DNA of 63,918 nucleotides, filler included, from Guillardia theta CCMP2712 (GCF_000315625.1; 7 parts of 6 records of this genome joined end to end with filler, not necessarily neighbours in it), one strand, 5' to 3'; counted from the first letter of the whole stretch, positions 3,670-63,918 are shown. Numbers and translations are program-made. The notes: a model not told the origin generated them from the sequence alone.

Positions 3670-6658
3670 AAGGTAGAGAAGCAGGAGCTGGAGCAGCAGC
3701 AGCAGCAGCACGGGAGGTACTTGTCGCACCTGGACGAGCAGCAGGCCGAACTTGCGCTCGAGGGTCTCGATGACGTGAAGAAAGATAGAGTCGAGAGAAT
3801 CTGCGAGAAGCAATCAGCAGAGCGAAGAGTGAGGGAAAGAGGAAGGAGGAGGAGGGGGAGAGGAAGGAGGAGGAGGGAGAGAGGAAACAGGAGGAGGGAG
3901 AGAGGGAGGAGGAGGAGGGGGAAGGAACAGAGGGGGAGGGAGAGTGAGGGAGAGAGGGGGAGTGAGAAAGGGAGGAGAAGAAAGGAGGGGATGCGAACAG
4001 GAGAGGGAGAACAAGGAGAGGACAAAAGGGAGGAGGAGGAGCGGGGGGAGATGGGGAGGTGGAGGGGTTAAGGGATTACAGCATCTGCTATGGAGGATCT
4101 CGTTGACTTGATCGTCGCCGTTGAGGAGCGAATCATGAGCAACGCTCGTCCACAACTCGATCGCCCGGGGGGTCGGGAAAGTCTGCAGCCCCTCCACGTC
4201 ATCAACACGGTCGAGGAGGTTGAGGATGCTTGTTGGAGACGATCTCTTAGCAAGCAGGTGTGACGTTAGCATCGCTCTCTTCTCCTGCCAGCTCTGTCAT
4301 GTCCTCCCATGCACCACATAAGGAGCAGGAGCGTGCTCGCACCTCGGCATGCAGCGGGGGCATCGCGCCGATCCGCATCCTCCCCGTCCTCGCAATCCGC
4401 AGAGCAGCCGCGTACACATGCTCCTGCAGATGCTCGACAAAGAGCTGCTCCGGCATGTGCATCAGTGCGTTCCTCCTCACCCTGCCCCTCGTCTGCTCCT
4501 CCTCCACAGTATCTGCGTCCTCGGTGGAGAACCTCTCGGCCCAGAGGAAGCTCAGCTGCTCGTCGGGACCAGGAGGGTCACTGGAGATGAAGAGAAGGAT
4601 CCTCCTCCACAGTCCCTCCCTCTCCTCCTTGCTGAGCGATCGCATGTGCTCCTCGATGGCTGAGCACAGGTGGATGCACTCGTTGAACCTCAACCCGTCG
4701 AGCACCAGCACAACCTTCCTCCTCCTCTCCGCAATGATCTGCTGCATCGTGCCCAGTAACTTTGCAAACACTTGAGCATCCGACGGCTGCCTGCCCCCGA
4801 ACGCCCTGCAGCTCCCAAGGCCCTGGACTGAAAGCTCGACCGTGAGAGTTTTGAGATACGTCATATAGGTCTGTCCATGCTGCCTGTGCCAGTCCACACA
4901 TACCGGCAACCAGTCCATCCCTCCCCTTACTCCTCGCTCCTCCCCTCCCTCATCCTCCCCCCTCCTCTCCTCCTGTCCCTCATCCTCCCCCCTCCTCTCC
5001 TCCTGTCCCTCCTCCTCCCCCAACCTCTCCTCCTCCTCTTCCTCTCCCTTTCCGCTGCCAACGGGGGAAAGCCCATCATAGATATCAACCCTTGACTTCT
5101 GAACTCTCATCCCCTCCATCCCGGGTGCATCGCCGCCGGCCAGGGGCCCAGCTGCAGGAGCGCGTCCGGCGTCACCCCGAGCTGGAAAGGAGCTGTGGGA
5201 GGTGAAGATATGACCGGACTTGAACTCCCGAGCCAACTGAGCGAGCAGGGAGGATTTCCCAGCTCCCGCCTGCCCCAGCACAAGGTTGACGTAAGAGTGC
5301 CGGTATGAGGAGTCTCCCATGCTGAAGAGCCGAGCTGTCTCCAGGAGACCCTCCAGGAGCGTCACGACCGAGGGTCCTGCAGCACATCAGATGGCACATG
5401 GCAAGGGGATCAAACTCGCCTTTTCCTCCCTCCCGGTCGTCTAGAGCTGACGGCACGTAGGGAGCTCGGAAGCGCTGGAGCAGCCTGCCAGTCTCCTCCT
5501 CCTGCATGCGCCGATGGAGCAGCCACTCGCGCAGGAACAGGTCGGGAAACACCTCCTCCCTCGCCATCAGCATCCCCTTCCTCACCAGCTGCTCCTGCAC
5601 GTCAGCCAGCAGGCAGACGCCGATCTCCCTCATCTGCTCCTCCCGCGCTCGCGCGAAGGATTGGATGTCCCGCTCTTGCTTCAGGTTTCCCACAAGGAGC
5701 TCGACGCCGCTGGGAGGCGCCGGCAGCTTCGCTTTCGAAAACTCTTTCGCAGCAGAGGAGAAGAGCTGGTCAAAGAGGAGGACGGCGGCGGTGAGAGCAG
5801 GGCGATCGGAGTTGGCGGCAAGGGAGGAGAGGTAGCGAGAGAGAGCGTCCGGGTCCAGAAGGACTTCGGACGCGTCAGCCAGGAAGTCTCGTCGGACAGT
5901 TTTGAAAACTTTGACCGCAAACTCGCGCGAGTAGACGTCGGGGATCAGCCCGACCAGCTCCAGGTTTGACAAGCACTCCTCCATGCTGCACTGCCTGTCG
6001 GAGCTCTGCTGGGCCTCCTCCCAGCTGCTGCCGACCTGGCGGTCCCTTCCTACCCTCTTCCGGATCTCGAGGGTGTGGAAGGCCTTAGGGTTGGCGTGCA
6101 GCACGTAGTCAGCAGAGTAGCGACTGAGAAACTGCTCGACCAGCTGCTCCTGCGGCAGCTGGCCGAGAGCTTCCTCGTCCAACGGGGGCCGAGACGGAGC
6201 GAGGACGGTAGGATGCAAGTCCATCCAGCTCTTCAGCCACATGCTCCCATGGCCACTCTCGATCAAGGAGTGCAAGGGAAGCTTCTCCTGCAGGACGCGC
6301 ACCGGCCTTCCTCGTCCCTTGTCCCTCCCCTGCCTCTTCTCCAACTCGGGCATTGCGATGAGCTCGACGGTGACTTGCTCCGCGTCCTCCGCGTCCAGCC
6401 ATCGCCTCCTCCCAGTCTCCTGGTCCAGCATCGTGACCCGCGCCCTTCCGTCATGGTGGACAGCTACGTCCACTGCCTCCTCCACGGCTCCCCGAGCTGT
6501 CAACCACACGACCTCCTCCGCATGCTCTGGGAGCTTCACCACTGGATCGCCCTGGGGCGAAGAGGACGCGCTCTCTTCCATCGGCCATTCGCCGATCAAA
6601 GTCTGACCGAGGAAGACTCTGCAAGAGAAGCTGCCATGGTGTATGACCTTTACCCCTT

Positions 6659-62830: not shown

Positions 62831-63918
62831 TAAGCTAAACCTCCAGGCACACAGCGCACAGCGAGAAGCTGCACAATCACACACAAAACACAAGCCCGAA
62901 AAGAACCAGCACTGCTGGCACCCAGACGCGGCATCGCCAGCCCAAGCGCGAAGCCGCGCAGACAGCGAGAAGCTGCACAATCACACACAAAACACAAGCC
63001 CGAAAAGAACCAGCACTGCTGGCACCCAGACGCGGCATCGCCAGCCCAAGCGCGAAGCCGCGCCGACAAGCAGCCGAAGGGTCAGGCAATCAAGCAACAA
63101 GCAGCAGGAGCATGCAGGAGGAATAAAATCCCTTAGACGCGATACCCGGAGGCAGCCGACTGACCACTGTCAGTCGAGACGTCCGCTGCCGCCACAAAGC
63201 GGGCGGCCGCGGACGGAGAAAGGGCAGCCGCCGACAAGGAGCCGGCGTTGCCCGGGGGTCCGCCTGGGGCAGCGGACGGAGGGAGGCTGGACACAGGAAC
63301 ACGGTACCGCTCGAGGATATAGGATTTACTGGCAGAAGATAAAAAGTGCCTCAAGCAAAACATAGCAGGAACAAGCTCAACCGGCAGGTACACAGTCCAC
63401 AGCGAGAAGCTGCACAATCACACACACAACACAAGCCCGAAAACAACCAGCACTGCTGGCACCCAGACGCGGCAGCGCCAGCCCAAGCGCGAAGCCGCGC
63501 GAGGTAGTCCTCATCGCTAGCCTTCTGCCAGTAAATTCTATATCTCCGAGTCAGCGGTAGCCGAGTCAGCGGTAGCCGCCCGTGACGGCGGCGACGCCGC
63601 AGCAATGCCCAAGGACCGGCGTGACCCGACCGATGCCGGGATTTGGATTTACTGGCAGAGGGTAAAAAGTGCCGGGGAGGAAGCAGGCGAGCTCGGACCA
63701 GCAGCAAGCACCCCAGTGGTGTCGAGCTCTCCGTCTAGTACTCGGGTGGGGGACCACCGGGGAAGCGCACGTACCGTACAGAACCACAGTAGGTAGTATA
63801 GGATTTACTGGCAGAAGATAAAAAGTGCCTCAAGCAAAACAAAGCAGGAACAAGCTGAACCGGCAGAACCACACATTGCATGCTCCTGCTGCTTGTTGCT
63901 TGATTGCTTGACCCTTAG
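62831..63918 (-). mobile_element. Second cluster of the same CRE-like retrotransposon (3' parts, nested)
   Basis: Same ORF tail (..SAASGYRV*), same 3' UTR and four 3' termini as in 24500-32465. Confidence 0.9.

What the first reader, a model, noticed from the sequence alone, without database searches (positions are those of the whole stretch)
63312..63873. Four TSD-flanked micro-insertions of the element 3' end within about 560 bp on an independent contig
Seen: 63317-63499 (TSD CGAGG), 63524-63543 (opposite orientation, TSD CT), 63641-63669 (29 nt, TSD TGCCGGG) and 63789-63863 (TSD CAGAACCACA). Three interrupt recognisable element sequence, which resumes exactly after the TSD. The 5' junctions show microhomology and the 3' junctions carry short non-element additions instead of poly(A). 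Inference: these are repeated abortive target-primed reverse transcription events, independent support for self-targeting.
Basis: partly seen in the sequence, partly recalled or inferred. Interest (0 to 1): 0.8.

Follow-up and report, generated by a model that had tools for sequence, protein, structure and literature searches.

The report
Nested stubs of an algal LINE
This 1.1-kb contig of the alga Guillardia theta is a copy of a retrotransposon (a LINE) that was hit at least four more times by very short copies of the same element's 3' end; it is a clear but fairly ordinary record of reverse transcription that stopped early, plus a 5S rRNA-LINE hybrid copy.

Summary
All four inserts and their flanking direct repeats sit at the stated coordinates. 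Paralogous copies in Guillardia theta CCMP2712 scaffolds are uninterrupted at all four sites and carry one copy of each repeat, so these are true insertions with target-site duplications (TSDs).

- **The element.** It is a literature-undescribed, poly(A)-less, single-ORF LINE. It has a reverse transcriptase followed by a CCHC motif and R2-like endonuclease motifs. No AP-endonuclease or zinc-finger domain was detected.
- **Population sample.** About 165 kb of related loci plus the contig hold 63 copies with the 3' tail, 14-2049 nt long, and 35 are under 100 nt.
  - About two dozen interruptions of host copies were found. None is an internal fragment from outside the tail region.
  - Both orientations occur. 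TSDs are 1-18 nt, 5' microhomology is 0-5 nt, and there is no poly(A).
- **Mechanism.** This fits DNA-level target-primed reverse transcription that stops early.
- **Self-targeting.** It is supported only as an enrichment: 51 of 59 3' junctions lie in element DNA, against 37% of bases. No nick-site motif was found, so passive accumulation is not excluded.
- **The fourth insert.** It sits in a 5S rRNA-derived segment of a 5S-LINE chimera, not in element sequence.

Verdict: a new variant of a known kind, of moderate interest.

The parts
62831..63732 (-). Host copy A of the LINE, sense on the minus strand. It covers the C-terminal ORF part plus the 3' UTR and is interrupted by ins1-3. The contig's left end cuts its tail.
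   Evidence: 96-99% identical to many G. theta copies. Homology to other copies stops at 63732.
62858..63063 (-). Two units of a 104-bp tandem repeat in the 3' UTR of copy A. Other copies, and ins1, carry one unit.
   Evidence: TRF: period 104, 2.0 copies, 99% match. Family D1.
63064..63132 (-). The first part of the 3' UTR (called UTR1 in this report), directly after the stop codon of copy A.
   Evidence: Collinear with other copies. An inverted copy lies at 63877-63916 (I1).
63133..63316 (-). Stop codon (63133-63135) and the last 60 codons of the element ORF (...LERYRVPVSS...SGQSAASGYRV).
   Evidence: Translation. Nine proteins, 81-100% identical; eight of them end at the same ...GYRV stop.
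63317..63499 (-). ins1: a 183-nt 5'-truncated copy of the element's 3' end (tail plus one 104-bp unit). TSD CGAGG at 63312-63316 and 63500-63504.
   Evidence: ref 4038-4222, 97.3%. Empty site in five paralogues.
63505..63523 (-). Host ORF segment between ins1 and ins2 (..ASDED..).
63524..63543 (+). ins2: a 20-nt copy of the 3' end, inverted relative to the host. It is flanked by CT at 63522-63523 and 63544-63545.
   Evidence: ref 4200-4222. Empty site with a single CT in five paralogues.
63546..63640 (-). Host ORF segment. It includes a 15-bp tandem repeat that encodes ATADSATADS.
63641..63669 (-). ins3: a 29-nt copy of the 3' end, comprising 25 nt of tail plus ATTT. TSD TGCCGGG at 63634-63640 and 63670-63676, of which TGCC is also element sequence.
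   Evidence: (ref 4188-4216). Empty site in five paralogues.
63677..63732 (-). Last host ORF segment of copy A (..GELDTTGVLAAGPSSPAS). Element homology ends at 63732.
63733..63788 (+). 3' part of a 5S rRNA-like sequence plus a trailer. It continues after ins4 as CATT (63874-63877). This is the 5' portion of chimeric retrocopy B.
   Evidence: Rfam 5S_rRNA: 18.2 bits here and 25.1 bits, E 0.0018, for the longer copy L005 14132-14209. 57 of 57 nt identical to L005.
63789..63863 (-). ins4: a 75-nt insert, comprising 67-70 nt of tail plus GTAGGTAG. TSD CAGAACCACA at 63779-63788 and 63864-63873.
   Evidence: ref 4151-4220, 100%. Empty site in L005 14205-14220.
63877..63918 (+). Element copy B, sense on the + strand, 5'-truncated inside UTR1 and fused to the 5S trailer. 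The contig end cuts it.
   Evidence: Inverted repeat I1, 98%. Maps to ref 3983-4017. A parallel 5S-tail chimera lies in L005 14145-14375.

Best explanation
The contig comes from Guillardia theta. It holds a 5'-truncated copy (A) of a poly(A)-less, single-ORF LINE. The ORF runs: reverse transcriptase, then a CCHC motif, then a probable R2-type restriction-like endonuclease, then an acidic/Ser-rich tail. The 3' UTR follows, with 104-bp repeats and an 80-nt tail ending ...CTGCCAGTAAATCCTAT(A/G)T.

Copy A was later hit by further integration events of the same family.

- Each event nicked one DNA strand and used the 3'-OH to prime reverse transcription at the very 3' end of element RNA.
- Synthesis stopped after 20-183 nt.
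- The cDNA end was joined to the other side of a staggered break through 1-4 nt of microhomology, which left TSDs of 2-10 nt.
- Three such stubs sit in copy A: two in the host's orientation and one inverted.
- A fifth event inserted a chimeric retrocopy B into copy A in inverted orientation. The enzyme had switched template from LINE RNA to the 3' end of a 5S rRNA transcript.
- ins4 then landed in the 5S trailer of B.

Shown here: the insertions, the TSDs, the empty sites, the anchoring at the 3' end, the RT-coding element, and the recurrence of the pattern elsewhere in the genome.

Inferred: the enzymology (first-strand nick, early stop, microhomology joining, template switch), and that the family prefers its own DNA copies as targets.
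For: - **Empty sites.** Paralogues are uninterrupted at all four sites and carry a single copy of each TSD. Removing ins1-3 restores the ORF.
- **Organism.** The HMMER search gave nine proteins, and the two looked up map to GCA_000315625.1. That accession is Guillardia theta CCMP2712 (PMC8379373). NCBI-sourced protein hits are named GUITHDRAFT.
- **Reverse transcriptase.** Pfam RVT_1 scores 28.5-29.3 bits. Pfam PF00078 is precomputed on P0010-P0014, and five G. theta hits carry the UniRef name 'Reverse transcriptase'. All 30 nearest named Atlas clusters carry RVT_1.
- **Endonuclease.** The motif order after the RT is CX2C..H..C, (A)H, KGD, ADVT, K..K...Y, DGT. This matches the R2 endonuclease motif list in PMC4838377. 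No AP-endonuclease was found in the 1511-aa relative P0038.
- **Population.** 63 tail-bearing copies of 14-2049 nt, 35 of them under 100 nt.
- **Interruptions of host copies.** About two dozen were found.
  - Twenty carry the terminal 12-mer.
  - Two carry its first 7-10 nt.
  - Two carry damaged tails.
  - None is an internal fragment from outside the tail region.
- **Orientation and overlap.** Same versus inverted is about 13:11. Target overlap is positive (1-18 nt) in essentially all clean cases.
- **No poly(A)** at any 3' junction.
- **Different sources.** ins1/ins4, ins3 and ins2 carry different tail variants (AGAT, AGGGT, GAATTT), so they came from different source RNAs.
- **Template switching.** Two independent 5S-LINE chimeras share the same 5S end but have different junctions. 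At least 11 head-to-tail junctions exist.
Against: - No read-level or population evidence shows that the host copy existed before the inserts.
- The endonuclease assignment rests on motifs only.
  - The AF2 model was unusable (pLDDT 39).
  - PDB sequence searches gave nothing.
  - Pfam has no hit there.
- RVT_1 falls just under Pfam's cut-off.
- Insertions cluster strongly in some copies: four in about 200 nt of host sequence in L004, and three plus a chimera here. About 10 kb of equally similar copies have none. Plain independent insertion does not explain this.
- No nick-site consensus was found.
- The ins1 and ins2 repeats alone are within chance.
Confidence: 0.75

Rival explanations
1. Passive accumulation, not self-targeting. 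The LINE nicks DNA more or less anywhere. Stubs survive mainly inside dead element copies because the rest of this gene-dense genome does not tolerate them. The inserts would still be TPRT products, but would say nothing about target choice.
For: - No sequence motif appears at 21 nick sites.
- Host sites are spread along the element roughly as 3'-biased copy abundance would predict.
- ins4 and a few others lie in non-element sequence.
- The loci were chosen because they carry the element, and their non-element DNA is mostly genes.
Against: - 51 of 59 3' junctions lie in element-derived DNA, against 37% of bases. That is about 1 per kb against 0.1 per kb.
- Short inserts should be tolerated in introns and spacers too.
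- Strong clustering occurs in particular copies that are no more diverged than clean copies.
Confidence: 0.3
2. Copy-choice during one event. While copying the host RNA, the reverse transcriptase repeatedly jumped to the 3' end of another element RNA, copied a few dozen bases, and jumped back. The 'inserts' would then have arisen together with the host copy, with no separate DNA integration.
For: - This enzyme clearly switches templates: 5S-LINE chimeras and at least 11 head-to-tail junctions exist.
- Inserts cluster within single copies, often in the host's orientation, for example four in L004.
- Microhomology is present at the return junction.
Against: - About half of the clean nested inserts are inverted relative to the host, including ins2.
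- Target overlap is almost always a duplication, never a random mix of duplication and deletion. A return jump onto single-stranded RNA ahead of the polymerase should give deletions (inference).
- Inserts within one cluster carry different tail variants, so they had different source RNAs.
- ins4 is inverted relative to the chimeric retrocopy B that carries it.
Confidence: 0.1
3. Break repair. Random double-strand breaks in repeat DNA were patched by end-joining that captured or copied pieces of abundant LINE cDNA or DNA (templated insertions).
For: Microhomology at one junction, a few extra bases at the other, and very short insert sizes.
Against: - Every insert is tail-derived. About 22 of 24 start at the element's exact 3' terminus, and none is an internal piece from elsewhere in the element.
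- Targets are consistently duplicated by 1-18 nt.
Confidence: 0.05
4. Assembly artefact. The 1.1-kb contig is a chimera of repeat reads.
For: The contig is short, unplaced and repeat-only. The loci of the G. theta scaffolds examined have many gaps inside this repeat family.
Against: - Mis-assembly does not create exact target duplications at sites that are single-copy in paralogues.
- The same architecture occurs inside long scaffolds (L004, L005, L008).
Confidence: 0.03

Closest known systems
R2 / NeSL / CRE-type LINEs that carry a restriction-like endonuclease (RLE)
   Same: - A single ORF in the order RT, then CCHC, then PD-(D/E)XK-like motifs.
- No AP-endonuclease.
- A defined 3' end without poly(A).
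- Extra bases at the 3' junction, 5' truncation and template jumping. R2-type template jumping is established knowledge, for example PMC10499050 and PMC6895275, which were listed but not read.
   Different: - No N-terminal zinc-finger or Myb domain was detected.
- There is no single conserved target site or nick motif.
- TSDs vary from 1 to 18 nt.
- A long acidic/Ser-rich tail follows the endonuclease.
- The endonuclease fold is unverified.
Self-nesting LINE clusters: Zepp (Chlorella/Coccomyxa) and GilM/GilT (Giardia). These are recalled from memory and were not read here.
   Same: Copies accumulate inside and next to copies of the same family. This gives head-to-tail arrays (a roughly 1066-bp array in L001) and nested clusters.
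   Different: - As I recall, Zepp has poly(A) tails and inserts at them.
- Here there is no poly(A), insertion points are scattered along the element, and most new copies are stubs under 100 nt.
L1-mediated chimeric retrocopies (U6/L1, 5S rRNA/L1) and Magnaporthe MGL chimeras (titles and abstracts of PMC2104539, PMC4476161 and PMC6789731)
   Same: The 3' end of a small Pol III RNA is fused in the same orientation to a 5'-truncated LINE 3' part, and the whole is nested with a short target overlap (L005 14145-14375; window 63733-63918).
   Different: - The 5S part is itself 5'-truncated, at about 59 and 80 nt.
- The driver is not an L1-type element with an AP-endonuclease.
- An RNA-ligation route (PMC6789731) cannot be told apart from template switching here.
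Ordinary 5'-truncated L1 insertions with microhomology at the 5' junction
   Same: Truncation, TSDs and 1-5 nt of microhomology at the 5' junction.
   Different: - Truncation is far more extreme. The median is under 100 nt and inserts go down to 7-20 nt.
- Stops recur 17-23 nt from the 3' end (7 of 63).
- There is no poly(A).

Membership tests
Non-LTR retrotransposon (LINE) | Encodes a reverse transcriptase with LINE-type motifs | tested here: met
   - RVT_1 scores 28.5-29.3 bits against a cut-off of 29.6.
- Pfam PF00078 is precomputed on P0010-P0014, and five G. theta hits carry the UniRef name 'Reverse transcriptase'.
- All 30 nearest named Atlas clusters carry RVT_1.
- Motifs RPIVIG, LDAKNAFNS, QGD and YADN were seen by eye.
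Non-LTR retrotransposon (LINE) | Copies share the 3' end, are variably 5'-truncated, are flanked by TSDs and have no LTRs | tested here: met
   63 copies of 14-2049 nt all reach the 3' terminus. TSDs are 1-18 nt. Empty sites were found.
RLE-bearing LINEs (R2/NeSL/CRE group) | CCHC motif and a PD-(D/E)XK endonuclease C-terminal to the RT | tested here: inconclusive
   - The motif order is CDGC..HHLQTC, AHDN, KGD, ADVTLV, EKIRKH..Y, STDGT. It is conserved in the 70%-identical relative P0038 and matches the R2 motif list (PMC4838377).
- There is no Pfam or PDB hit.
- The AF2 model is unusable at pLDDT 39.
RLE-bearing LINEs (R2/NeSL/CRE group) | No AP-endonuclease domain | tested here: met
   Pfam finds nothing beyond RVT_1 in the full 1511-aa ORF P0038 or in P0010.
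RLE-bearing LINEs (R2/NeSL/CRE group) | N-terminal zinc-finger or Myb DNA-binding domain | tested here: not met
   No such Pfam hit was found in the 400-aa N-terminus of P0038. The N-terminus of the G. theta family itself was not recovered.
RLE-bearing LINEs (R2/NeSL/CRE group) | One conserved target site (rDNA, spliced-leader gene and the like) | tested here: not met
Small-RNA/LINE chimeric retrocopies | The 3' end of a small RNA is fused to a 5'-truncated LINE 3' part in the same orientation, within one TSD-flanked unit | tested here: met
   L005 14145-14375 is nested at ref 3111 with a 3-nt overlap. In the window, 63733-63918 has the same 5S end and a different LINE junction, but its far end is off the contig.
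5S rRNA (identity of the fused segment) | Reaches the Rfam RF00001 gathering score | tested here: not met
   18.2 bits (window) and 25.1 bits (L005), against a gathering score of 38. Only the 3' half is present. Local E is 0.0018 in a 151-nt search. The match is 5S-like, and the G. theta 5S gene was not available for comparison.

The most novel reading that the evidence does not exclude
The family actively homes to DNA copies of itself without a sequence-specific nick site or a recognisable DNA-binding domain. It could do this by pairing of its RNA with homologous DNA, or by acting on transcribed copies. One bound particle would then make several abortive priming attempts in a small region, which would explain the clusters of stubs in both orientations. 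That would be a natural homology-guided LINE.
Probability: 0.1. Interest if true: 0.85.

Novelty: new variant of a known kind. Interest (0 to 1): 0.42.

Why it matters
- It documents a LINE family in a cryptophyte alga that I could not find described in the searchable literature. The family has an R2-like layout but no fixed target.
- It gives an unusually dense natural record of reverse transcription that stops 7-200 nt after priming. The record includes recurrent stops about 20 nt in, template jumps, and 5S rRNA chimeras.
- Such records show what an R2-like enzyme does in vivo when integration fails. This bears on attempts to use these enzymes for gene insertion.
- If the preference for its own copies is active, it would point to a target-choice mechanism not yet known for LINEs.
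- Practically, these stubs break gene models. Many G. theta 'hypothetical proteins' (P0002, P0008, P0009, P0025, P0028) are read-throughs of nested copies.

Tried and rejected
- **Exact scans for the terminal 29-mer** in genome contigs, metagenome contigs and viral contigs gave 0 hits.
- **Literature search** for the 14-mer gave 0 papers.
- **Open frame after removing the inserts** is weak evidence on its own. Two of three frames are open in each segment of this GC-rich DNA. It became meaningful only through identity with P0002 and P0004.
- **A (T/G)ACCG or CTCGAG-like target motif** that I saw by eye at the four sites did not hold up across 21 nick sites.
- **A 3' tail hairpin** to explain the stops about 20 nt in is not supported. 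The fold is no better than shuffles (z -0.31).
- **ins1 as a full-length SINE-like derivative.** Its 5' end coincides with a repeat-unit border, but truncation points near there are scattered (ref 4031-4077).
- **Endonuclease fold.** The single-sequence AF2 model had pLDDT 39 and was not searched. phmmer against PDB gave nothing for the RT, the endonuclease region or the whole protein. The Atlas gives only unnamed clusters for the endonuclease part.
- **Rfam at gathering threshold** on all loci found nothing.
- **Counting non-anchored fragments** as a control failed because the loci are too scrambled. It was replaced by the interruption test.
- **Word-index protein searches** found relatives only in G. 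theta, plus three metagenome or read-archive contigs.
- **Coordinates.** I joined L003 1-2173 to L004 10382-12430 in scratch as a coordinate ruler (called 'ref' throughout). It is not a consensus and is not reported as a sequence.

Full report
**What is in the piece.** The piece (62831-63918, about 60% GC) is built almost wholly from one repeat family.
- Four segments share one end, TATAGGATTTACTGGCAG... on the + strand for three of them and its reverse complement for the fourth. Their other ends differ.
  - ins1, 63317-63499, CGAGG.
  - ins2, 63524-63543, inverted, CT.
  - ins3, 63641-63669, TGCCGGG.
  - ins4, 63789-63863, CAGAACCACA.
- Within the contig alone, with +/-6 nt of freedom at both borders, only the 10-nt repeat (P about 0.001) and the 7-nt repeat (P about 0.02) exceed chance.

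**Identifying the host sequence.** The minus strand carries an ORF ending at 63133-63135.
- I searched its last 60 codons (window:63136-63315:-) against 1.84 billion representative proteins. This gave nine hits of 81-100% identity, and eight of them end at the same ...SGQSAASGYRV.
- The two hits looked up lie on scaffolds of GCA_000315625.1. That accession is Guillardia theta CCMP2712 (PMC8379373). NCBI-sourced protein hits are named GUITHDRAFT.
- P0002 and P0004 read ...GELDTTGVLAAGPSSPASSPASVGSRRSLGIAAASPPSRAATTDSATTDSEASEEDYLERYRV... This matches, apart from a few substitutions, the frame I obtain after deleting ins1-3 plus one repeat copy each.

**Empty sites.**
- Alignment A2 shows five paralogous copies (L001, L002) uninterrupted at the ins1, ins2 and ins3 sites. 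Each has a single CGAGG, CT and TGCCGGG.
- The ins4 target is uninterrupted, with one CAGAACCACA, at L005 14205-14220.
- All four are therefore real insertions with target-site duplications.
- 5' microhomology is 1, 2, 4 and 3 nt.
- At the 3' junction, ins3 has ATTT, which makes a GGATTT GGATTT doublet, and ins4 has GTAGGTAG.

**The element.** An ENA metagenome contig (L003) carries an intact 947-aa piece, P0010. A read-archive contig (L010) carries a 70%-identical full ORF of 1511 aa, P0038.
- **Layout.** An N-terminal region with no Pfam domain is followed by the RT. Next come CDGC..HHLQTC, AHDN, KGD, ADVTLV, EKIRKH..Y and STDGT, and then an acidic/Ser-rich tail.
- **3' UTR.** After the stop come a 69-nt first part (UTR1), one or two 104-bp repeat units, and an 80-nt tail ending ...CTGCCAGTAAATCCTAT(A/G)T.
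- **Reverse transcriptase support.**
  - RVT_1 scores 28.5-29.3 bits, just under the 29.6 cut-off.
  - The RPIVIG, LDAKNAFNS, QGD and YADN motifs are present.
  - All 30 nearest named Atlas clusters carry RVT_1.
- **Endonuclease.** The motif order after the RT is that listed for the R2 restriction-like endonuclease: CCHC, RH, PD, D/E, K..KY, RG.W (PMC4838377). I could not verify the fold.
  - AF2 gave pLDDT 39.
  - There are no PDB or Pfam hits.
- **Domains absent.** No AP-endonuclease, zinc-finger or Myb domain was detected.
- **Literature.** I found no paper on this family. Repbase could not be checked.

**Population sample.** I fetched nine more loci, about 131 kb of non-N G. theta scaffold.
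- As a coordinate ruler ('ref') I joined L003 1-2173 to L004 10382-12430.
- Together with the piece there are 63 copies that reach the 3' terminus, 14-2049 nt long, and 35 are under 100 nt.
- Truncation points recur at ref 4200/4201 (7 copies, inserts of 17-23 nt), 4168/9, 4177-9 and 4151/2.
- The tail RNA has no significant fold.
- No junction has poly(A).

**Interruption test.** Wherever a host copy is interrupted by 8-450 nt and resumes, the inserted piece is tail-derived, in about two dozen cases.
- Twenty carry the terminal 12-mer.
- Two carry only its first 7-10 nt. One is L008 8266-8277, ctGGATTTACTG between GCTT repeats. The other is L007 10747-10766, between CTGAT repeats.
- Two have damaged ends.
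- None is a fragment from elsewhere in the element.
- Orientation relative to the host is about 13 same to 11 inverted.
- Target overlap is positive, 1-18 nt, in essentially all clean cases.
- Microhomology is 0-5 nt.

**Mechanism.** These features fit reverse transcription primed on nicked DNA at the RNA's 3' end, staggered second-strand cleavage and microhomology joining. The features are 3' anchoring, TSDs, both orientations, an RT-coding element, and different tail variants among neighbouring stubs (AGAT in ins1 and ins4, AGGGT in ins3, GAATTT in ins2).
- **Copy-choice is a real rival**, because this enzyme does switch templates (see the 5S section).
  - It predicts one orientation only.
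  - By inference, it predicts deletions at the return point, not duplications.
- **Capture during break repair** does not explain why the inserts are tail-derived and almost all start at the exact 3' terminus.

Element homology of copy A stops at 63732.
- Positions 63733-63788 plus CATT (63874-63877) match the 3' half of 5S rRNA and a trailer (18.2 bits).
- The same 57 nt occur at L005 14161-14217 within a longer 5S-like piece (25.1 bits, E 0.0018 in a 151-nt search; below the gathering score of 38).
- In L005 the unit is [5S 3' part ...CACATTT + cact][tail from ref 4077]. It is nested in an element ORF at ref 3111 with a 3-nt overlap.
- In the window the same 5S end is fused to the element at ref 3983 (63877-63918, sense on +).
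- These are two independent 5S-LINE chimeras of the kind known for L1 and Magnaporthe MGL (titles and abstracts).
- At least 11 junctions where a copy's 5' end abuts another copy's 3' tail also point to template jumping.
- ins4 therefore lies in the 5S-derived part of chimera B, which itself sits inverted inside copy A.

**Self-targeting.**
- In the loci, 51 of 59 3' junction flanks are element-derived, while 37% of non-N bases are.
- Twenty-one nick sites share no motif. The (T/G)ACCG and CTCGAG pattern I saw at the four window sites does not generalise.
- Stubs cluster.
  - L004 has four at host ref 1974, 2050, 2092 and 2174.
  - The window has ref 3783, 3765 and 3663 plus the chimera at about ref 3605.
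  - L005 has two at the same nick before TACTCCT, with 7-nt and 18-nt TSDs.
  - About 10 kb of equally similar copies have none.
- The loci were chosen for carrying the element, and the rest of them is mostly genes. Tolerance in junk DNA remains a live alternative.
- I put an active preference at roughly even odds and its mechanism as unknown.

**Verdict.** The TPRT reading is well supported. 'Self-targeting' is supported only as an enrichment. This is a new variant of a known kind and of moderate interest.

Noticed in passing
window 63733-63788 plus 63874-63918; L005 14145-14375: Two independent chimeric retrocopies. In each, the 3' half of a 5S rRNA-like RNA, with trailer ...ACAGAACCACACATT(T), is fused to a 5'-truncated LINE tail at a different LINE position (ref 3983 and ref 4077).
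   Followed up: yes
L005 14420-14560: Two tail stubs (52 and 43 nt) lie back to back at the same first-strand nick (before TACTCCT, ref about 3158). Their TSDs are 7 and 18 nt, and both end in the same ...CCTATGTCA. L001 7056/9188 and L004 9161 have insertions within about 10 nt of this site, so it may be a hot spot.
   Followed up: partly
L004 9725-10380: Four same-orientation stubs (44, 14, 17 and 245 nt; TSDs 8, 5, 8, 6) lie within about 200 nt of host ORF (ref 1974-2174) in one long copy. They carry different tail variants.
   Followed up: partly
all loci: The bases after ...AAATCC vary by group of copies: TATAT(C), TATGTC, TGTA, ATT(A/G) and ACTAC/CTAC... The recurrent CTAC/ACTACTCC extras resemble the host sequence ACTACTCCTCC at ref about 3160. 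They may be short read-through from a source copy inserted there.
   Followed up: no
window 62858-63063; L001 7938-8039: The 104-bp unit in the 3' UTR is present twice in the window's host copy and once in most other copies and in ins1. On the minus strand it translates as ...CAASRLGWRCRVWVPAVLVLFGLVFCV, which appears inside several annotated G. theta 'proteins' (P0002, P0008).
   Followed up: no
L001 6300-9200: A head-to-tail array of three roughly 1066-bp units, each being the element's 3' part joined to the next unit's tail.
   Followed up: no
L010 (Logan SRR22388310 contig, 4961 nt): A sister family with an intact 1511-aa ORF, 70% identical. Its 3' UTR runs into a (GT)n microsatellite at the contig end. 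The organism is unknown.
   Followed up: partly
L001, L002: Every larger copy of this family in the G. theta scaffolds examined borders an assembly gap (for example L002 14437-20261). No full-length genomic copy could be read.
   Followed up: no
window 63546-63578: A 15-bp tandem repeat (CCGAGTCAGCGGTAG x2.2) inside the ORF encodes ATADSATADS. Its copy sequence varies among paralogues.
   Followed up: no
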